Source of the DNA: Chrysemys picta bellii
Lineage: Eukaryota
Length of the DNA: 64,000 nucleotides
Assembly (NCBI RefSeq): GCF_011386835.1
Contig: NC_088796.1
Location: 71,486,001-71,550,000 of the forward strand
Reading direction: 5' to 3'
Made by a program: the position numbers and the translations under genes. Positions 5,557 through 17,059 of the stretch are shown in pieces (the first letter of the stretch is position 1; the number at the start of each line of letters is the position of its first letter). Under the pieces are notes generated by a model, which had not been told where the DNA came from, searched no databases, and saw only the letters and a program-made list of their open reading frames with translations.

Positions 5557-6610
5557 CATAAGAATGGCCTACTGGGTCAGACCAATGGTCCTTCTAGCCC
5601 AGTGTCCTGTCTTCCAACAGTGGCCAATTCCGGGTGCTTCAGAGGGAATGAACAAAATGAACAGGCCATCATTGAGTGATCCATCACCTGTCGTCCACTC
5701 CCAGCTTCTGGCAAATAGAGACTAGGGACACTCAGAGCATGGTGTTGCATCCCTGAGCATCTTGACTAATAGCAATGGATGGACCTTCCTCCATTAACTT
5801 ATCTAGTTCTTTTTTGAACCATGTTATAGTTTTGGCCTTCACAACATCCCCTGGCAAAGCATTCCACAAGTTGACTGTGTGTTGCATGAAGAAGTACTTC
5901 CTCTTGTTTGTTTTAAACCTGTTACATATTAATTTCATTGGGTGACCCTTGGTTCTTGCGTTATGTGAAGGAGTAAATTACATTTCCTTATTCACTTTCT
6001 CCACACCAGTCAAGATTTTATAGATCTTGATCACATCCCCTCTAAGGCAGTGCTTCTTAAAGTTGGGCCGCCGCTTGTTCAGGGAAAGCCCCTGGTGGTC
6101 CGGGCTGGTTTGTTTACCTGCCGCGTCCACAGGTTCGGCCGATCGCGGCTCCCACTGGCTGCGGTTCGCTGCTCCAGGCCAATGGGGGCTGCGGGAAGGG
6201 TGGCCAGCACATCCCTCGGCCCGCACCACTTCCCACAGCCCCCATTGGCCTGGGACGGCGAACCGCGGCCAGTGGGAGCCGCGATCGGCCAAACCTGCGG
6301 ACACAGCAGGTAAACAAACCGGCCCCGGACCACCAGGGGCTTTCCCTGAACAAGCGGCGACCTGCTTTGAGAAGCACTGCTCTAAGTCATCTCTCTCCCA
6401 AGCTGAAAATGTCCTATCTTTTTAATGTCTCCTCATACAAAAGCTGTTTCATGCCCCTAATCATTTTTGTTGCCATTCTCTATACCTTTTCCAATTCTAA
6501 TGTATCTTTTTTGAGATGGGATGACCAGATCTGCATGCAGTATTCAAGATGTGGATTTACATAAGAGGCATTATGATATTTTCTGTGTCTTATTATCTGT
6601 CCCTTCTTTT
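5557..6610 (-). mobile_element. 5'-truncated CR1 LINE (ORF2 C-terminus plus 3' UTR), split by a hAT MITE
   Basis: Minus ORFs give ...PHLEYCMQIWSSHLKKD... and ...[22 protein letters not shown]..., typical CR1 ORF2; tail cataagaa at the left end. Confidence 0.9.
6048..6379. mobile_element. Palindromic hAT MITE
   Basis: TIR cagtgcttct(t/c)aaag; whole element folds into a hairpin with ~150-bp arms; 8-bp TSD ctctaagg/ctctaagt inside the CR1. Confidence 0.92.
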
Positions 6611-6638: not shown

Positions 6639-6897
6639 TAAGAATGGCCATACTGGGTCAGACCAGTGGTCCATCTAGCCCAGTATTCTGTCCTCCAGCA
6701 GCGGCCAATGCCAGGTGCTTCAGAGGGAATTAACAAAACAGGTAATCATTAAGTGATCCTGCCCTTGTTGCACATTCCCAGCTTCTGGCAAACAGAGGCT
6801 AGGGACACTTCAGAGCATGGTTTTGCATCCCTGCCCATCCTGGCTAATAGCCGTTGATGGACCTATTCTCCATGAACTTATCTGGTTCTCTTTTGAA
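6639..6897 (-). mobile_element. CR1 3' UTR fragment
   Basis: taagaatggccatactgggtcagacc... same 3' UTR type as the copies at 5557 and 13497. Confidence 0.85.
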
Positions 6898-9030: not shown

Positions 9031-11002
9031 TTTTCTTTACTACTGCAGGATTGTTCCCTACAGTGATGCCTTGTTGTATCCAGGTTTTAAGTGACTCATG
9101 TAATAGGGCTTTCATCAAGTGGAACCCATTTAATCATTAAAACAGTTTTTCCTGACACTGAATCTAAATTTTATTTTATTCACTTTCACCCCATTACTTA
9201 TCATTCTCACTCACCTTCTCTGAAGAATGGACTTATTCTCAACTGTTTGGCAGATCTCTTTTGCTGAAAAGAGATATTTTCTAATTGTCAGGTCACATGA
9301 TTTTGATTCTATACAAGCATTCTAGATTCATTAGCTCGCTTCTGGATCTCTGCCCATGGATGGCATAAACAATGCTGAGTTCTCCTTTTTCTTTACATAT
9401 GCAGAACAGCACAATGTTATGATACAGTGCACCCTTTAATGGTGTTCCTTCCATGTATATGTAGCTGTGTCTTTTCCAGCATTCATTCACAAAATTGTAA
9501 TTTTTAAATCTTTCAACACTTTTAGTTTCACCTACATTCTAAATGTGGACTCTGAATCTAGTCATTCCATTTACACATGTTCCTCTTTTTTCCCCTTTAG
9601 AAAAAAATAATACAAGGATGTATGTGCCTGTAAGGTAGCTCAATCCATCATCTGCTGGTCTGGAATGGAGGTATTAGGTCTAAAGAGCTAGTTTGCAGAA
9701 AAGCTGGTGCACCTACCTCAGGACCCATGAATAGAAGCCACATCTCTGATGCAGGAGCAGAGGATGGGATTGTCTTCAGTAGCAGGGCAATAGGATCTGA
9801 GTAGAAAAAAATCAACACCTAGGCAATCAGGTTGCTTAGAACAGGACTGCTCTTTGTGGAAGTGGCCAGGCAAAGGAATTTAGTGTAGGCTCTTCTAGTT
9901 CTATTTATTTGTTATATTTTAAAACTTGTTCTTTGTGTTAGGGGAAGAGAGTCCCTCTTTGTCTTTATCTGAGGCTAAACTTTGAAACTAGGTGCCCAAA
10001 TTTAGGCACCTATATCCAAACGTAGGCACCTGTTTGTCAGAGCTGCTGAGTCGCACACCTCAACTGAAGTCAGTGGGAGCTGCAAGTGCTCAGCACTTCT
10101 GTTTAGATGCCTAAGTGTAGGCTTCGGTCCTTAATTTGAAAACGCTGGCCTTCGTGATGTCCCTGAGCAGCCTCATTTTCCTCACTCACATCAATAACAG
10201 GTTCTCTTCCAGAGGTGCTCAGTGTACAGCCCAGAGCCAGATGCAATAGCACAGAAGCTGGCAATGCATTCAGTGGCTGCCTTTTCCTATAACTGCAGGG
10301 TCAGGACGAAGCCAGTGAACTGTGTGTGTTTTTATGGGAATCCTGATTGCAGGCTATGGCCCAGATCATGCAACGTCTTGCACATAATTGGACTGCTGCA
10401 CCTGCTTACAACCCCATTGCATTTAACAGGGCTCCCTTTGGGTGCAGCAATCTCCTCAGATGTATGAAATTGCAGGATTTGGGCCTAGTTCAGCAATTGC
10501 TATTAATCTTTCAGGAATGATTTCCACAACCATAACATCTGTTTTCACTTGAATTTATCTTTACTTTAGAGGATAGTTAGGGTTATATGCAAATTAGCTG
10601 TGATCCATAGACTCAAGTCAATCACCAATGTTCCTTCAATCCCTCATTACAAAATGCTCTCCCCATGCTGGGGTCCAGAGTTCACCCTCAGCAAATTTGG
10701 ACTAGAGAGTTGGATCATCGGCTCTTGATTCCTGGCGCATCATTAGGCAAGTTACTTAACTTTATTCTGCCTTTTTGTTCTCTAACTAAAGATCTATCAA
10801 GTAACAAAATTATCTTTCCTGGCATAGCAGATTCATGCAGTAAAAAAAAAAAAAAACCTGGCTGAGGAAAGGTAAATCTACTTAAAGCTGTTAACAAGAA
10901 AATAAAACCTAACTTCAAAGTGGGTTTCTCCAAAAGCCAGATGTGCGGAGTGTTGATGGGCAAACTTCTTCAATAAACAGATCTTACAAGCGTCACTTAA
11001 AT

Positions 11003-11327
11003 CAATGCTTCTCAAAGTTGGGCCGCCGCTTGTTCAGGCAAAGCCCCTGGCGGTCCGGGCCGGTTTGTTTACTTGCCACATCTGCAGGTTTGGCTGATCG
11101 CGGCTCCCACTGGCCATGGTTCGCTGCTCCAGGCCAATGCGGGAAGCGGCGCGGGCTGAGGGATGTGCTGGCCGCCCTTCCCACAGCCCCCATTGGCCTG
11201 GAGCGGCGAACCGTGGCCAGTGGGAACCGCGATCGGCCGAACCTGTGGATGTGGCAGGTAAACAAACCGACCCAGACTGCCAGGGGCTTTCCCTGAACAA
11301 GCGGTGGCCCAACTTTGAGAAGCATTG
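11003..11327. mobile_element. Palindromic hAT MITE, same family as 6048-6379, with inverted flanks
   Basis: TIR caatgcttctcaaagttgggcc at both ends; internal sequence closely similar to the 6048 copy; no direct TSD. Confidence 0.92.
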
Positions 11328-13241
11328 ATTTAAGTGACGCTTGTAAGGAATGAGATCTCTGAACAGACTGGAGAACAAAGTGAGGAGATGCTTGGAAAGC
11401 TAACAGAGAGCCAATTACCAGATTTAATGTATAATCTAACATATTTTAATGGAGTGTAGTATACAGGTCTGTATTTGATGTAGTATCTCACAACAGCATC
11501 TACAAGCACAGGTAAGTCTGTATCTTTTCTGGCTTGAACCATCTTACATTTTCCTTCATCCTCCATATTGAGAATTACAAACCTCCCACTGAGAGAGGAA
11601 CATAAAGCTTCTCCTTCCTCGGATTTGATAGCAGGAAGACACAATACAGCTAAAACCACAGACAGAAGGCATCAAAGCAGTTGTATGCATAGCTACTGCA
11701 CCAGAGCAGGTTAAGTACAAACAACTCTCAGGGCCCAATGCAAAGACAATGTGTAAAATGCCTTTAATAATGTTGTCTTCCCTACACTTGGACTCACTTA
11801 AGCCAATTTTGTAAGGGAGTCTAAACTGGTGTAAGTTACATACGGAGATGCCTGAAGAAGATATAAGCTAACGTGACTTATGCCTTTTTGCACTCTAGAG
11901 TTGCTTTCTATTCTCCTCAGGTCTGACCCCACAATATGTTACACTTTCTTAAACTCCTTTAGACTTCAGTGAAACAAATTCAGTGGTGATGGATGTGGGG
12001 GTGCGAGTTCCATGTTGGTGAGCAGTTTGAGTCTATCTCTATAGACAGTCTAGCACCAGAGTGAACTTTCCCACCGTTCTGCTTACAGAGGTCGCTATGG
12101 GTCTGAGATGATCTGTGACAGAGACAGTGTGCTGGAAGAAAATGAACACCAGTGGCAGGAATATGGTCTGATATAGGCAGACTCGGACATTTGTAGGGAA
12201 TTTCTGTGAATCTATGCCATTGCTGGGACCAAAGAGAACTTGCCTCTCCTTTGCCATAGAATCAGAGAAGAGAAATAGAAACATAGAAACTCATGCCCTG
12301 GAGACCCTCCCCAGACTGCCTCCACTCTACCCCACAGCCACTGCAGGGGATGATCATTCAAGTTCACAGCAATGATCCACCAAATCCAATAAGTGTCAGA
12401 TTTGGGGGCACAGGTAACAAGATCTGAAGGACTCCGCTTCCAAGTAGTTAAATGATAAATGCTATTTAATGACTAAGAGGCTCAGGTCAAACACTGCAGA
12501 AAGAAGTTAGAACCTTGTGTTAAGATGGGCATTGATTTTTGGCTGATATACCTTAGCGCTTATTGATGTTTCTGCTCACTCAGAGGCAGATTCTGATCTC
12601 AGTTACACCACAAAGTAACTATAGATTTACCCCAGTGTGCATAAGTTCAGAATCTGGCCTTGAGGGGGAACTCTCCTAGCAAGCACCCTGGCTTCATTAG
12701 TTCAACTCTGAGATAAAGTTTTTGAGAAGTTTGACTAATAAGTGTGGATTAAATTTATTGCATTAGTGATTTTAATGTGTTTTAAGGTCAGTGCGTTACA
12801 ACTCTACTTACTGCTGATGGGTTCATGGTCCCTGGAGCATTTTATTGACTTTAGATAGCTATGCTAACCTGTAGTCAGGCTCAGTCCCACGAGGTGCTGA
12901 AAAGCCTGAACTCCTATTAAAGCCAGTGGGAGCTCAGGGTATTGCAGCAGAACCAAGTGTTCAGCAACTCAAAGGAGCAAGCCCTTAGCAAAGAGGAGGA
13001 GATGCTTTCCCATGAAATCAAAAGCTTGACTGAAAGGCAATATTTGATTAGCTATCTGGTTATCTGTTCCTTCAGCCTGTTTAATTACAGTCTATGCATC
13101 AAGGAGGCCACACAGTCAGTTGGGTGCGGCAGTAGAAAGTGAAGGCCTTGCTGATTTCAAATATAAAGGGCATGAAAAGAAACATTCACTATTTCTTTAC
13201 AAAGAGATAGAAGTTGCTTTTTATAGTTTAGGGTCATGTTT

Positions 13242-13493
13242 CATAGAACCATAGGGTTAGAAGGGACCGCGGGGGTCATCTAGTCTAACTCCCTGCCAAA
13301 ATGCAGGATTTGTTGTCGCTAAACCATCCAAGACAGATGGCTATCTAGCCTCCTTTTGAAAACCTCCTGTGAAGAAGCTTCCACAACCTCCCCAGGCAGT
13401 CTGTTCCATTGTCCTACTGTCCTTACAGTTAGGTAGTTTTTCCTGAGATTTAATCTAAATCTGCTCTGCTGTACTTTGAACACATTGCCTCTT
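13242..13493 (-). mobile_element. CR1 3' fragment
   Basis: catagaaccatag tail; minus ORF ...RFRLNLRKNYLTVRTVGQWNRLPGEVVEASSQEVFKRRLDSHLSWMV. Confidence 0.88.
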
Positions 13494-13616
13494 ACGTAAC
13501 ATAAGAACATATGAAAGGCCATATTTCATCAGACCAAAGGTTGTTCTTACCCAGTATCCTGTCTTCCGACAGTGGCCAATGCCACGTGCCCCAGAAGGAA
13601 TGAACAGAACAGGTAA

Positions 13617-16169
13617 CACTGATCTACAATTTTTGAGAAGTCGTCTGCTTCAGAGATAAAATGTGCTATTTCTTATGTATTTTGATGTGCTGAATTCAAA
13701 TATGACAATTAAAACAACTGATTGGCTACTGTTTCTAAGATATTTAAGTTTTTACATTTTATGTCTATGTATATTGTGTAGATGATAGAGTTTTAATCAT
13801 AAATTGTAAACCTAGGTCTTTTCATGTGTTTATGGTTGCTTTACATGATAATATTTCACCTGTCCTGTTTATGTAACACTTTAAAAATCAGCAAAAGGGT
13901 TATATAAATAAAATGTATTATGAAACAAAAGGCAAAAAACTATTATGTACATAGTTTAGTCCTAGTCAGTGTCTACTCGGCGCTTCTTGGCTTGTCTCTT
14001 GTATTCATTAAATGGAGCATCTCTTGTCACTGTCCAGCAATAGTCTGCAAGCATTGATGGGCTCCATTTGCCCTGATAGCGTTTCTCCATTGTTGCAATG
14101 TCCTGGTAAAATCGCTTGCCTTGCTTGTCGCTCACTGCTCCACAGTTCGGTGGAAAAAAATCTAGATGAGAGTGCAAAAAATGTATCTTTAGTGACATGT
14201 TGCAACCAAGGCTTTTGTATGCCTTGAGGAGGTTTTCCACCAACAACCTGTAGTTGTCTGCCTTGTTGTTTCCGAGAAAATTTATTGCCACTAACCGGAA
14301 GGCTTTCCACGCCGTCTTTTCTTTGCCATGCAGTGCATGGTCAAATGCATCATCTTGAAGAAGTTCACGAATCTGAGGACCAACAAAGACACCTTCCTTT
14401 ATCTTAGCTTCACTTAACCTTGGAAATTTTCCACGGAGGAACTTGAAAGCTGCTTGTGTTTTGTCAATAGCCTTGACAAAGTTCTTCATTAGACCCAGCT
14501 TGATGTGTAAGGGTGGTAACAAAATCTTCCTTGATTCAATAAGTGGTAGATGCTGAACACTTTTCCTCCCAGGCTCCAATGACTGTCGGAGTGGCCAATC
14601 TTTCTTGATGTAGTGGGAATCTCTTGCACGACTATCCCATTCGCAGAGAAAACAGCAGTACTTTGTGTATCCAGTCTGCAGACCAAGCAAGAGAGCAACA
14701 ACCTTCAAATCACCATAAAGCTGCCACTGATGTTGGTCATAGTTTATGCACCTCAAAAGTTGTTTCCTGTTGTCATAGGTTTCCTTCATATGGACTGCAT
14801 GACCAACTGGAATTGATGGCAAAACATTGCCATTATGCAGTAAAACAGCTTTAAGACTCGTCTTCGATGAATCAATGAACAGTCTCCACTCATCTGGATC
14901 GTGAACCATGTTGAGGGCTGCCATCACACCATCGATGGTTGTTGCAGGCTACAAGATCACCTTCCATGAAGAAGAATGGGACAAGATCCTTTTGACGGTC
15001 ACGGAACATGGAAACCCTAACATCACCTGCCAGGAGATTCCACTGCTGAAGTCTGGAGCCCAACAGCTCTGCCTTACTCTTGGGTAGTTCCAAATCCCTG
15101 ACAAGGTCATTCAGTTCACCTTGTGTTATGAGGTGTGTGGTTCAGAGGAGGAGGATGGGAGAAAATGTGGGTCCTGTGACATTGATGGTTCAGGACCAGA
15201 AGTTTCATCCTCTTCCTCTTCCTCATATGACTCAAGTGAGAATGATTCTGGTGCATCAGGAACCGGCAGTCCTTCTCCGTAGGTTACTGGGTGTATAGCT
15301 GATGGAATGTTTGGATAATGCACAGTCCACTTTTTCTTCTTTGACACACCTTTCCCAACTGGAGGCACCATGCAGAAGTAACAATTGCTGGTATGATCTG
15401 TTGGCTTTCTCCAAATCATTGGCGCTGCAAAAGGCATAGATTTCCTTTTCCTGTTCAACCACTGGCGAAGATTTGTTGCACAAGTGTTGCAGCATATGTG
15501 TTGGGCCCACCTCTTGTCCTGATCTCCAATTTTGCAGCCAAAATAAAGGTGACAGGCTTTCTTAACCATAGTGGTTATACTGCGCTTTTGTGATGCAAAA
15601 GTCACTTCACCACAAACATAGCAGAAGTTATCTGCACTGTTCACACAAGTACAAGGCATCTCTGCTCACTTTGGCTAAACAGAAATGTGTCCCTTTGCAA
15701 AATCAAACACTGACAAATAAGAGAGCACGACACTGTATGATTTCTAGAGCTGATATAGGGCAATTTGTTCAGCAGAGTGATGTAAGCTTCGTTATGATTG
15801 CATCATCCATGACTTCTAGGAATAACATGATGCAATTCAGATCATGTATGACACAATACCAGCTTCAGATTGCATCATTCATTGTTTTGCCTAAAAAGCA
15901 AGTACTGTCCAAACCCAGTCATAGATTTAGTCATAGATCCAGTCAAAGATGTATTTTAGTCATTTCTGGTTTAAATTGAGATCCCTTCCCTTTATAACTC
16001 ACTTATCCTCCGCCATTCCCAAGTCAACGGTCGTATATACTGACCCAATAGTATATCTTGAAAACTAGAGCCAATCAACAATTTTAAGCATCATTTTTGT
16101 TCTCAATGACCCAGAATTAGTAAAGTTTGACTACATTTATTTCAGAAGCATTTTGGCTGTAGAGCAGTG
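13617..16169 (-). mobile_element. Full-length Chapaev3-type (CMC superfamily) DNA transposon, 2553 bp
   Basis: Ends CACTGATCTACA... and ...TGTAGAGCAGTG (imperfect TIR); 3-bp TSD TAA (13614-13616, 16170-16172); internal transposase. Confidence 0.92.
13962..15659 (-). pseudogene. Chapaev transposase, two frameshifts (~564 aa when repaired)
   Basis: N-terminal FCYVCG..CC..C..CYFC zinc region, RLFIDSSKTSLKAVLLHNGN, GDLKVV, CCFLCEWDSR, LPPLHIKLGLMKNFVKA, GAVSD.xG.RF.QD; apparent +2 (CA slippage, ~15135) and +1 (~14937) insertions; no in-frame stop in the joined frames. Confidence 0.9.
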
Positions 16170-17059
16170 TAATCATCAAGTGATCCATTCCCTGTCGCCC
16201 ATTTCCAGTTTCTGGCAAACAGAGGCTAGGGACACCATCCCTGCCTATCCTGGCTAATAGCCATTGATGGACCTATCCTCCAGGAATTTAATAATTTTTT
16301 GGAACCCTGTTATAATCTTGGCCTTCACAACATCCTCTGGCAAAGAGTTCTGCAGGTTGACTGTGCGTTGTTTGAATACTTCCTTTTGTTTGTTTTAAAC
16401 CTGCTGCCTATTAATTTCATTTGGTAGCCCCTAATTCTTGGGTTATGAGAAGGAGTAAATAACACTTCCTTATTTCCTTTCTCCACACCAGTCATGATTT
16501 TATAGACCTCTATCATATCCCCCCTTAGTCGTCTCTTTTCCAAGTGAAAAGTCCCAATGTTATTACTCTGTCCTCATACGGAAGCTGTTGCATACACCTA
16601 ATCATTTTTGTTGTCCTTTACTGAACCTTTTCCAATTCCAATATATCTTTTTTGAGATGTGGCGACCACATCTGCACACAGTATTCAAGATGTGGGCGTA
16701 CCATATGGATTTATATAGAGGCAATATAATATTTTCTGTTTTATTATCTATCCCTTTCTTAATGATTCCCAATATTCTGTTCGTTTTTTTGATTGTCGCT
16801 GCACATTGAGTGGATGTTTTCAGAGAACTATCCACAATGACTCCAAGATCTCTTTCTTGAGTGGTAAAAGCTAATTTAGATCCTATCATTTTATATGTAT
16901 AGTTGAGATTATATTTCCCAATGTGCATTACTTTGCATTTATCAACAGTGAATTTCATCTGCTGTTTTGTTGCCCCATCACCCAGTTTTGTGAGACCCCT
17001 TTGTAGCTCTTTGCAGTCTGCTTTGGACTACTATGACATCATCTGGAAGGAGACATCAT

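What the first reader, a model, noticed from the sequence alone, without database searches (positions are those of the whole stretch)
13617..16169. Nearly resurrectable full-length Chapaev3-type transposon
Seen: complete ends, TAA TSD, an empty-site match in the sister CR1 at ~6740, and a transposase needing only removal of a 2-bp CA slippage and a 1-bp insertion to give ~564 aa without stops. It sits inside a CR1 3' UTR, so it post-dates that CR1. Known: Chapaev3 elements are patchily distributed and horizontal transfer among animals, including vertebrates, has been reported. Inference: a relatively recent invasion, and a good template for reconstructing an active enzyme from a superfamily with little biochemical characterisation.
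Basis: partly seen in the sequence, partly recalled or inferred. Interest (0 to 1): 0.72.

Follow-up and report, generated by a model that had tools for sequence, protein, structure and literature searches.

The report
Decayed Chapaev3 transposon copy in turtle
This is one dead copy of a very abundant turtle cut-and-paste jumping gene (Chapaev3 type, with an enzyme that folds like the antibody-gene recombinase RAG1); the anatomy is as described, but the copy has lost key enzyme residues, so it is an ordinary fossil of a family that probably entered several turtle lineages by horizontal transfer.

Summary
Window 13617-16169 is a 2553-bp element with CACTG...CAGTG ends and TAA on both sides. A sister CR1 3' UTR gives a clean empty site (TAA at 6743-6745). 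The minus-strand transposase frame has only two breaks.

Every Chapaev3 feature I could test is met, except the A/T bases beside the TAA repeat (half met) and the N-terminal zinc finger (weak fold match). An intact relative folds like RAG1/Transib (Z 19.6).

"Nearly resurrectable" fails for this copy. It has 35 private substitutions, 18 of them amino-acid changes. Eight hit columns that are at least 95% conserved in 84 homologs. Both glutamates of the invariant SDEHGERFHQ motif are now lysine. Turtle copies with open 560-562-aa frames also carry such hits.

"Recent invasion" holds only relative to the hosts. Copies from Pelodiscus, Macrochelys and emydids are 95-98% identical and form a star tree. 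Their founders differ by under 1%, against the 12-22% I estimate for vertical descent. This copy is 1.4-1.6% from its founder, roughly 20-40 My old.

The nearest non-turtle relative, in Tara Oceans marine metagenome contigs, is 84% identical across the ORF.

Whether this insertion is shared with other species could not be tested. The scan has met this family before on other DNA (s1-335692, s1-329903, s1-337954).

The parts
13617..16169 (-). Full-length Chapaev3-type DNA transposon, 2553 bp, transposase on the minus strand
   Evidence: It is 95-98% identical over its full length to copies in Chrysemys, Malaclemys, Macrochelys and Pelodiscus.
13614..13616 (.). Target-site duplication TAA, left copy
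16170..16172 (.). Target-site duplication TAA, right copy
13617..13628 (+). Terminal inverted repeat at the 3' end of the element: CACTGATCTACA. Other copies have CACTGGTCTACA.
16158..16169 (-). Terminal inverted repeat at the 5' end of the element: CACTGCTCTACA
13646..13662 (+). Second conserved end motif, TGCTTCnGAnAnAAAT-like, starting 30 nt from the 3' terminus (22-nt gap after a 7-nt CACTGnn)
   Evidence: (I20). Position and motif are kept in the marine relative L007 although the spacer sequence differs.
16134..16150 (-). The same motif at the 5' end, starting 20 nt from the terminus (12-nt gap)
15129..15659 (-). ORF piece 1 (177 codons): N-terminal Cys/His zinc-finger (Chapa-like) domain and acidic linker. 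It ends in the out-of-frame tail TS and a stop.
   Evidence: Model pLDDT 88.6; the only fold matches are ZAD domains.
15133..15139 (-). Frameshift 1: a CA run with 2 extra bases that are private to this copy
   Evidence: (table 4)
14893..15141 (-). ORF piece 2 (83 codons; in frame from HLITQ to ACNN)
14937..14938 (-). Frameshift 2: one extra base that is private to this copy
   Evidence: (table 4)
13965..14948 (-). ORF piece 3 (328 codons): RNase H-like DDE core with C(2)C, LH and H(4)H motifs; stop codon at 13962-13964
14103..14132 (-). Mutated catalytic-E motif. It reads SDKQGKRFYQ where 84 diverse homologs have SDE(H)GERFHQ; D, both E, F, the second H and Q are invariant and S, G and R at least 90% conserved.
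15797..15877 (.). Three TGATGCAAT (ATF4/C-EBP-type) sites within 81 bp, upstream of the ORF
   Evidence: 5 sites in the window, 1.14 expected. Conserved in the turtle copies, absent from the marine relative.
13495..13613 (-). Distal part of the host CR1-like LINE 3' UTR, interrupted by the insertion
   Evidence: Summed depth there is very high in four turtle runs. The CR1 name rests on my own knowledge of CR1 ORF2/3'UTR sequence; Pfam found nothing in the flanking ORF pieces.
16173..16330 (-). Proximal part of the same CR1-like 3' UTR
6743..6745 (.). Single TAA at the paralogous empty site in the sister CR1 3' UTR

Best explanation
What it is: a single, neutrally decayed, non-functional copy of a high-copy Chapaev3-type cut-and-paste DNA transposon family of turtles. 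It inserted at a TAA inside a CR1 3' UTR.

How the intact family works (inferred): the roughly 562-564-aa transposase has an N-terminal Cys/His zinc-finger (Chapa/NZD-like) domain and a RAG1/Transib-like DDE core. That core comprises an RNase H fold plus a C(2)C...H(4)H zinc module. By analogy with RAG1 and Transib it would bind the CAC-terminated ends, which carry a second conserved motif at unequal distances (12 and 22 nt). It would then nick next to CAC, release the element through hairpins on the flanking DNA, and reinsert with a 3-bp staggered cut that gives the TWA duplication.

State of this copy: after insertion it picked up two frameshifts and 35 substitutions, including loss of the glutamates in the catalytic-E motif.

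Family history: the family itself is much younger than the deep turtle splits. It most likely reached softshell, snapping and emydid turtles by separate horizontal transfers from aquatic donors.

Shown here: the element's anatomy, its homology, the predicted fold, the decay pattern, and the between-species identities. Inferred: the reaction chemistry, the dates and the horizontal transfer.
For: Anatomy.

Homology:
- 4476 relatives in animals and metagenomes, many on contigs of 2.1-2.7 kb.
- The 90% cluster holds Chrysemys, Malaclemys, Macrochelys and Pelodiscus proteins.

Chapaev3 hallmarks listed in PMC4079192, all seen here:
- TWA duplication and CAC...GTG ends.
- DDE with C(2)C, LH and H(4)H motifs.
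- A transposase of about 556 aa. The paper adds that most Chapaev3 transposases outside Merrow and Garfield are encoded by a single exon, as here.

Fold:
- The AlphaFold2 model of the intact turtle relative P0131 has pLDDT 87.3.
- It matches RAG1 core with Foldseek E 2e-7.
- By VIA-align, Z is 19.6 with rmsd 3.6 A over 366 residues; HzTransib scores 18.7, BbRAGL 17.4, P element 11.8 and Hermes 9.5.

Decay:
- 35 private substitutions, 18 non-synonymous to 6 synonymous in the ORF.
- Eight hits to columns at least 95% conserved.
- SDEHGERFHQ has become SDKQGKRFYQ.
- Both indels are private to this copy.

Family age:
- Pairwise divergence between copies is 1.0-5.1%.
- The ML tree is star-like with internal branches of 0.7% or less between species groups.
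- Non-coding parts are no more diverged than coding parts.
- An orthologous Chrysemys/Malaclemys insertion has flanks 2.4% diverged, which gives a local neutral yardstick.

Marine relative: 84% nucleotide identity over the ORF, dS 0.39-0.41, dN/dS 0.27, TAA duplication and the same two-part ends.
Against: - No Repbase or Dfam library was available, so homology to a named Chapaev3 reference transposase was not shown directly. Pfam, PHROGs and PDB sequence searches give nothing.
- The target is G-TAA...TAA-T, whereas PMC4079192 reports A-TWA...TWA-T.
- The N-terminal domain only matches ZAD domains weakly (Z 5.1; Foldseek E 0.26).
- The horizontal-transfer inference uses host divergence times from my own knowledge and only a 5.1-kb rate yardstick whose two halves differ (3.25% and 1.55%). 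Turtles evolve very slowly, which the authors of PMC11008031 warn can mimic recency.
- Only nine turtle copies were compared.
- No presence/absence test at orthologous sites was possible for this insertion or for the Pelodiscus and Macrochelys copies.
Confidence: 0.88

Rival explanations
1. The family is old and vertically inherited from the common ancestor of cryptodiran turtles. On this view the high identity between Pelodiscus, Macrochelys and emydid copies only reflects the very slow turtle clock.
For: Turtles evolve at about one third of the human rate. PMC11008031 warns that low divergence may reflect slow evolution. At least one insertion is orthologous between Chrysemys and Malaclemys, so part of the family predates that split.
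Against: - Founder-to-founder distances between the three turtle families are under 1%, and whole-copy distances are 3-5%.
- The Chrysemys/Malaclemys flanks alone are 2.4% apart, and those hosts split many times later than softshells.
- Macrochelys copies sit only 0.35-0.7% from their node.
- Non-coding parts are not more diverged than the ORF.
- All insertion sites compared differ, except the one emydid pair.
Confidence: 0.1
2. The copy is close to functional: correcting the two frameshifts would give an active transposase.
For: The ends and the duplication are complete, and there are no in-frame stops. D260, D314, C(2)C, LH and H(4)H equivalents are still present.
Against: - Both invariant glutamates and an invariant histidine of SDEHGERFHQ are replaced.
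- Invariant Y36 and P53 of the zinc-finger domain and the near-invariant Cys next to the second Asp are also replaced.
- In all, 8 of 157 conserved columns are hit, against a median of 1 in the 84 diverse homologs.
- The substitution pattern is neutral.
- The 3' terminal repeat also carries a private change.
Confidence: 0.03
3. It belongs to another superfamily (Transib proper, plant-type CACTA/En-Spm, or hAT) and not to Chapaev3.
For: The best solved folds are RAG1 and Transib. The termini CACTG and a 3-bp duplication also recall CACTA elements.
Against: - Transib and RAG make 5-bp duplications and hAT makes 8-bp ones; here the duplication is 3-bp TWA.
- No Pfam CACTA transposase family is hit.
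- The motif set and the N-terminal zinc-finger domain are those described for Chapaev/Chapaev3 (PMC4079192, PMC4411706).
- Kapitonov and Koonin place Chapaev3 as a clade beside Transib, which accounts for the fold match.
Confidence: 0.04

Closest known systems
Chapaev3 transposons (Merrow, Garfield and Conan families; Kapitonov and Jurka 2008; Zhang et al. 2014, PMC4079192)
   Same: 3-bp TWA duplication, CAC...GTG termini, element of about 2.3-2.6 kb, transposase of about 556-564 aa with DDE, C(2)C, LH and H(4)H motifs, patchy distribution, and very high identity across distant hosts.
   Different: This is a turtle family that the papers I could search do not describe. It has a single exon, unlike the two-exon Merrow and Garfield. 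The window target has G rather than A on one side of TAA. Its relation to the three named families was not tested, because no reference sequences were available.
RAG1 / Transib / ProtoRAG (BbRAGL) recombinases
   Same: The predicted core superposes on RAG1 residues 460-1008 (Z 19.6) and on HzTransib (Z 18.7). The ends start with CAC, like the RSS heptamer. A second end motif lies at two different distances (12 and 22 nt), reminiscent of 12/23 signals. From memory, the spacing of the second Asp to C(2)C is 19 residues, as for RAG1 D708 to C727.
   Different: Sequence identity is only about 12%, and there is no hit by sequence. The duplication is 3 bp, not 5 bp. There is no RAG2-like partner. 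The first-to-second Asp spacing is about half that of RAG1. A hairpin mechanism has not been shown for any Chapaev3.
hAT-6_XT horizontal transfer into turtles (Hassan et al. 2024, PMC11008031)
   Same: A DNA transposon with near-identical copies in several turtle lineages and in aquatic non-turtles, read as repeated horizontal transfer in aquatic settings.
   Different: It belongs to a different superfamily with an 8-bp duplication. hAT-6_XT copies are under 1% diverged and few. This family is 1-2.3% diverged and, by summed depth, very abundant.
CACTA/En-Spm and Mirage (the other CMC members, Yuan and Wessler 2011)
   Same: CACTG/CACTA-like termini, a 2-4-bp duplication, and DDE with C(2)C and H(4)H motifs.
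   Different: No Pfam CACTA transposase domains are hit. An N-terminal Chapa-type zinc finger is present. The hosts are animals.

Membership tests
Chapaev3 | 3-bp target-site duplication of consensus TWA | tested here: met
   TAA on both sides, and a single TAA at the paralogous empty site. Other copies, read in the transposase orientation: TTA/TTA (L004, L005a, L010), TAA/TAA (L006, marine L007), TCA/TCA (L005b), TAA/TTA (L003).
Chapaev3 | Invariable 5'-CAC ... GTG-3' termini | tested here: met
   CACTG...CAGTG in the window and at every terminus that was recovered complete in the other copies.
Chapaev3 | Insertion between A and T (A-TWA ... TWA-T) | tested here: inconclusive
   The window has G-TAA...TAA-T, so one side of two fits. 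L004 and L007 fit on both sides; L005a and L005b fit on one side.
Chapaev3 | DDE transposase with C(2)C, LH and H(4)H motifs | tested here: met
   In the family these are invariant: D260, D314, C333-x2-C336, L381-H382, H490-x4-H495, E509/E512. The window copy keeps all except the glutamates, which are both Lys.
Chapaev3 | N-terminal Chapa (RAG1 NZD-like) zinc-finger domain | tested here: inconclusive
   There are invariant or near-invariant Cys/His at C5, C13, C16, C57, C60, H89, C93 and C96. The model is confident (pLDDT above 90 over residues 10-140). The only fold matches are ZAD domains (Foldseek probability 0.84-0.87, Z 5.1), and they are the top six of only eight chains with Z of 2 or more. 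This mirrors what the 2026 preprint reports for NZD and Chapa. No RAG1 NZD entry appeared among the matches, so a direct comparison with NZD was not obtained.
Chapaev3 | Groups with named Chapaev3 reference transposases (Repbase) in a phylogeny | not testable with these tools
   No Repbase or Dfam sequences were available. Pfam has no model that hits.
Transib / RAG1-like | RAG1-type core fold (RNase H domain plus ZnC2/ZnH2 modules) | tested here: met
   Z 19.6, rmsd 3.6 A over 366 aligned residues to RAG1 460-1008. HzTransib Z 18.7, well above P element (11.8) and Hermes (9.5).
Transib / RAG1-like | 5-bp target-site duplication | tested here: not met
   The duplication is 3 bp here and in every copy checked.
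CACTA/En-Spm | Pfam CACTA transposase domains (Transposase_21/24) | tested here: not met
   No such hit at E of 0.1 or better in any of 85 family members.
hAT | 8-bp target-site duplication and hAT dimerisation domain | tested here: not met
   The duplication is 3 bp, there is no Pfam hAT domain, and Hermes scores only Z 9.5.

The most novel reading that the evidence does not exclude
One Chapaev3 lineage, carried by aquatic animals, entered at least three turtle families separately within roughly the last 10-60 My. A sister element with intact ORFs and perfect ends sits in Tara Oceans plankton metagenomes. In turtles the lineage amplified to thousands of copies. Its RAG1-like transposase uses ends with a conserved 12/22-nt asymmetric two-part signal. 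Natural intact relatives would then give a tractable model for how RAG-type recombinases choose paired ends.
Probability: 0.45. Interest if true: 0.6.

Novelty: new member of a known kind. Interest (0 to 1): 0.36.

Why it matters
The copy itself is an ordinary fossil. The family is more interesting, for three reasons:
- It adds turtles to the hosts in which Chapaev3 elements appear to have spread horizontally. Horizontal transfer of a DNA transposon between or into turtles was first documented in 2024, for hAT-6_XT.
- It gives a within-vertebrate, low-divergence family of a RAG1/Transib-like transposase, a group for which Chapa-domain function has not been tested experimentally (2026 preprint) and for which I know of no transposition assay.
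- Its ends carry a two-part signal with spacers one helical turn apart, which bears on the origin of the 12/23 rule.

For annotation, several RefSeq models in Chrysemys and Pelodiscus are simply this transposase ORF. They are named 'nuclear cap-binding protein subunit 3 isoform X2', 'protein boule-like isoform X2' and 'NMNAT3 isoform X1'.

Tried and rejected
- Pfam on the three ORF pieces and on 85 family members gave no family.
- PHROGs gave nothing.
- PDB sequence searches with single pieces and with a profile gave nothing meaningful.
- Exact-protein look-ups of the window's own 177-aa and 321-aa ORFs, tried as a way to find the same insertion in other assemblies, found nothing on record.
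- Read laying on four other turtle organisms was meant to test whether this insertion is shared. Logan contigs break where the CR1 starts (the unique contig ends at 13269). The 'joints' across 13612-16171 have sides of only 18-45 nt and come from CR1 paralogs, so orthology stayed open.
- Pfam on the CR1-like ORF pieces beside the element gave no hit, so the CR1 name rests on my own knowledge.
- Literature: searches for Chapaev plus turtle found no description of this family. The main text of Zhang et al. 2020 (PMC7070016) does not mention turtles or Chapaev.
- The idea that the window copy is a domesticated gene was rejected because of the frameshifts and the neutral substitution pattern.
- The summed depth, about 3e4 times the single-copy flank, was not turned into a copy number because the tool says it is not one.
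Full report
WHAT IS THERE

Window 13617-16169 is a 2553-bp element. Its termini are CACTGATCTACA on the left and CACTGCTCTACA on the right, read as reverse complement; they match at 11 of 12 positions. TAA directly abuts both ends (13614-16 and 16170-72).

The flanks belong to one interrupted repeat. With the element and one TAA removed they read GAACAGAACAGGTAA|TCATCAAGTGATCCA. The second copy of the same repeat at about 6730-6760 reads TAACAAAACAGGTAA|TCATTAAGTGATCCT, running on without a break. That is a clean paralogous empty site, and it proves a 3-bp TAA duplication.

From my own knowledge of turtle CR1 elements, the repeat is the 3' UTR of a minus-strand CR1-type LINE. Pfam did not recognise the short ORF2-tail pieces next to it.

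In four other turtle sequencing runs, many CR1 paralogs also skip 13612-16171. The window holds only this one copy of the element.

THE READING FRAME

The transposase lies on the minus strand in three pieces: 15659-15129, 15141-14893 and 14948-13965. The frames run 0, 2, 0, and no piece contains a stop.

Against eight other turtle copies, the breaks are two extra bases in the CA run 15133-15139 and one extra base at 14937/8. Both are private to this copy. About half of the contig depth at those places in four other runs also lacks them (table 4).

The read-through length of about 564 codons matches relatives of 562-564 aa.

WHAT FAMILY

Pfam, PHROGs and PDB sequence searches are blank.

The word search found 4476 relatives. 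Many are 550-570 aa long and sit on contigs of 2.1-2.7 kb, which is whole elements. Named ones come from moths, a firefly, a fruit fly, a pseudoscorpion, a leech, a frog and the painted turtle, at 60-77% identity to the C-terminal piece.

Zhang et al. 2014 (PMC4079192) list the Chapaev/Chapaev3 hallmarks:
- a 3-bp TWA duplication;
- invariable CAC...GTG termini;
- a DDE transposase with C(2)C, LH and H(4)H motifs;
- a transposase of about 556 aa.

They add that most Chapaev3 transposases outside the Merrow and Garfield families are encoded by a single exon.

All of these are present here. In an 85-sequence alignment the following are invariant, in P0131 numbering: D260, D314, C333-x2-C336, L381-H382, H490-x4-H495 and E509/E512.

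The reported A...T bases next to the duplication are only half met (G-TAA...TAA-T). I could not compare the protein with named Repbase references.

FOLD AND LIKELY MECHANISM

An AlphaFold2 model of the intact turtle relative P0131 is confident (pLDDT 87.3). Its residues 173-551 superpose on mouse RAG1 460-1008 with Z 19.6, rmsd 3.6 A over 366 residues. Other matches are HzTransib (Z 18.7), amphioxus RAG-like BbRAGL (17.4), P element transposase (11.8) and Hermes (9.5).

This agrees with Kapitonov and Koonin (PMC4411706), who place Chapaev3 as a clade beside Transib.

From memory, RAG1 has D600/D708/E962 and a zinc site of C727, C730, H937 and H942. The D314-to-C333 spacing of 19 residues equals that of D708 to C727. 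The H(4)H-then-Glu order also matches.

The N-terminal 140 residues, modelled from the window's own piece (pLDDT above 90), match only ZAD zinc-finger domains, and weakly. Foldseek probability is 0.84-0.87. The best Z is 5.1, and ZAD domains are the top six of only eight chains with Z of 2 or more among 48,161. [quoted passage not shown]

I therefore infer a RAG/Transib-like reaction: binding of the CAC ends, a nick beside CAC, hairpin formation on the flank, then integration with a 3-bp stagger. None of this chemistry is shown here.

THE ENDS

Both carry a second motif, TGCTTCnGAnAnAAAT. It starts at nucleotide 20 at the 5' end and nucleotide 30 at the 3' end, which gives gaps of 12 and 22 nt after a 7-nt CACTGnn.

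The same motif sits at the same two positions in the marine relative L007, although the longer spacer has a different sequence. This supports a functional, asymmetric two-part end signal.

STATE OF THIS COPY

Relative to the other turtle copies, the window copy has 35 private substitutions (1.37%; ML terminal branch 0.016). In the ORF, 18 are non-synonymous and 6 synonymous, which is the neutral ratio.

Eight replacements fall in the 157 columns that are at least 95% conserved among 84 diverse full-length homologs; the median for those homologs is 1. They are:
- Y36C, P53Q and E85K in the zinc-finger domain;
- H127Y;
- the Cys two residues before the second Asp, changed to Tyr;
- three positions of the motif after H(4)H, which reads SDKQGKRFYQ instead of SDEHGERFHQ.

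Both invariant glutamates, one of which must be the catalytic E, are therefore lysine. The 3' terminal repeat also has a private change.

Correcting the frame alone would give an open but disabled protein.

Annotated turtle copies with open 560-562-aa frames exist: P0128 in Malaclemys, and P0130 and P0131 in Chrysemys. They also carry 3-14 such hits. This agrees with two earlier notes of this scan on other copies (s1-329903, s1-335692).

AGE AND SPREAD

Full-length copies fetched from assemblies are 95-98% identical to the window copy over the whole 2.5 kb:
- Chrysemys: L003 and L010;
- Malaclemys: L004;
- Macrochelys: two copies in L005;
- Pelodiscus: L002, and L006 with an internal deletion.

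They lie at different sites, with one exception. L004 and L010 are the same insertion in Malaclemys and Chrysemys. Their flanks align over 7.6 kb, with flank substitutions of 121 in 5107 (2.4%) and element divergence of 2.0%. So the family was already inserting before that split, and 2.4% serves as a local neutral yardstick.

The ML tree, rooted with the marine relative, is star-like:
- terminal branches are 0.35-2.3%;
- the Pelodiscus pair and the Macrochelys pair are joined by internal branches of only 0.4% and 0.7%;
- non-coding parts are no more diverged than the ORF.

Trachemys and Malaclemys split about 15-16 My ago, and Chrysemys split somewhat earlier. That gives a rate of roughly 4-7e-10 per site per year.

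Softshells split from other cryptodires at least 150 My ago (my own knowledge). Vertical descent would therefore predict about 12-22% between founders. The observed value is under 1%.

Separate horizontal entries, or transfer between turtle lineages, is thus the best reading, at a probability of about 0.8. At the same rate this copy is about 20-40 My old.

The unique flank 12200-13269 differs by 1.3-2.1% from four closely related organisms. Per lineage that is less than the copy's own branch. The insertion is therefore probably shared with them, but this could not be tested.

NEAREST NON-TURTLE RELATIVE

The P0002 cluster comes from Tara Oceans marine metagenome contigs (L007-L009). Its features are:
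- 84% nucleotide identity over the whole ORF;
- dS 0.39-0.41 and dN/dS 0.27;
- a 12-bp perfect terminal repeat and a TAA duplication flanked by A and T;
- several intact 562-aa ORFs.

Its host is unknown.

NOVELTY

Chapaev3 elements, their TWA duplication, their horizontal transfer among animals including vertebrates, and their link to Transib and RAG1 are all published. I found no paper describing this family in turtles. PMC11008031 presents hAT-6_XT (2024) as the first documented horizontal transfer of a DNA transposon in or between turtles. Repbase probably already holds a turtle Chapaev3 consensus, but I could not check.

WHAT I LEFT OUT

Ages were taken from counts of private substitutions and from a tree. 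The ORF was searched piece by piece.

Noticed in passing
L004:2489-5020 and L010:2489-4942: This is the same Chapaev3 insertion in Malaclemys terrapin and Chrysemys picta (flanks align over 7.6 kb). Both species keep an open 562-aa frame. NG86 dN/dS between them is 0.33 (12.5 synonymous, 15.5 non-synonymous differences). It could be constraint (domestication) or chance: both share a Gly-to-Ser change in the invariant catalytic-E motif, and the counts are small.
   Followed up: partly
L007:154-2406 (also L008, L009): Tara Oceans marine metagenome contigs carry a sister element. It has 84% nucleotide identity over the ORF, a perfect 12-bp terminal repeat, a TAA duplication and several intact 562-aa ORFs. 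It looks like a possibly active family in an unknown marine animal.
   Followed up: partly
window 13646-13662 and 16134-16150: A second end motif (TGCTTCnGAnAnAAAT) lies 12 nt from the heptamer-like terminus at one end and 22 nt at the other. Positions and motif are conserved in the marine relative, while the long spacer sequence is not. This is reminiscent of 12/23 recombination signals.
   Followed up: partly
window 15797-15877: Three exact TGATGCAAT (ATF4/C-EBP-type) sites lie within 81 bp upstream of the transposase ORF (5 in the whole window against 1.14 expected). At least two of them are kept in every turtle copy checked (the third is missing in the two Pelodiscus copies), and none is present in the marine relative.
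   Followed up: partly
proteins P0131, P0121, P0126 (RefSeq models of Chrysemys picta and Pelodiscus sinensis): Three RefSeq models fall in the 90%-identity cluster of this transposase. They are named 'nuclear cap-binding protein subunit 3 isoform X2', 'protein boule-like isoform X2' and 'NMNAT3 isoform X1'. For P0131 and P0121 the whole CDS lies inside the element, so these look like annotation artefacts.
   Followed up: partly
window 13648-16181 in runs X4, X8, X9, X13: Summed contig depth over the element is about 3e4 times that of the single-copy flank, and it is even along the element. Joints at 14003/15352, 14163/14954 and 14587/15105 show internal-deletion derivatives. Macrochelys has two full copies within 47 kb (L005). 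Together this suggests thousands of mostly full-length copies, though the tool warns that depth is not a copy number.
   Followed up: no
window 6027-6425 and 10943-11442: ORFs on both strands share a repeated peptide (…SKLGRRLFRESPW.SG.VCLPA.STGSADRGSHW…). This points to another interspersed repeat family, which I did not identify.
   Followed up: no
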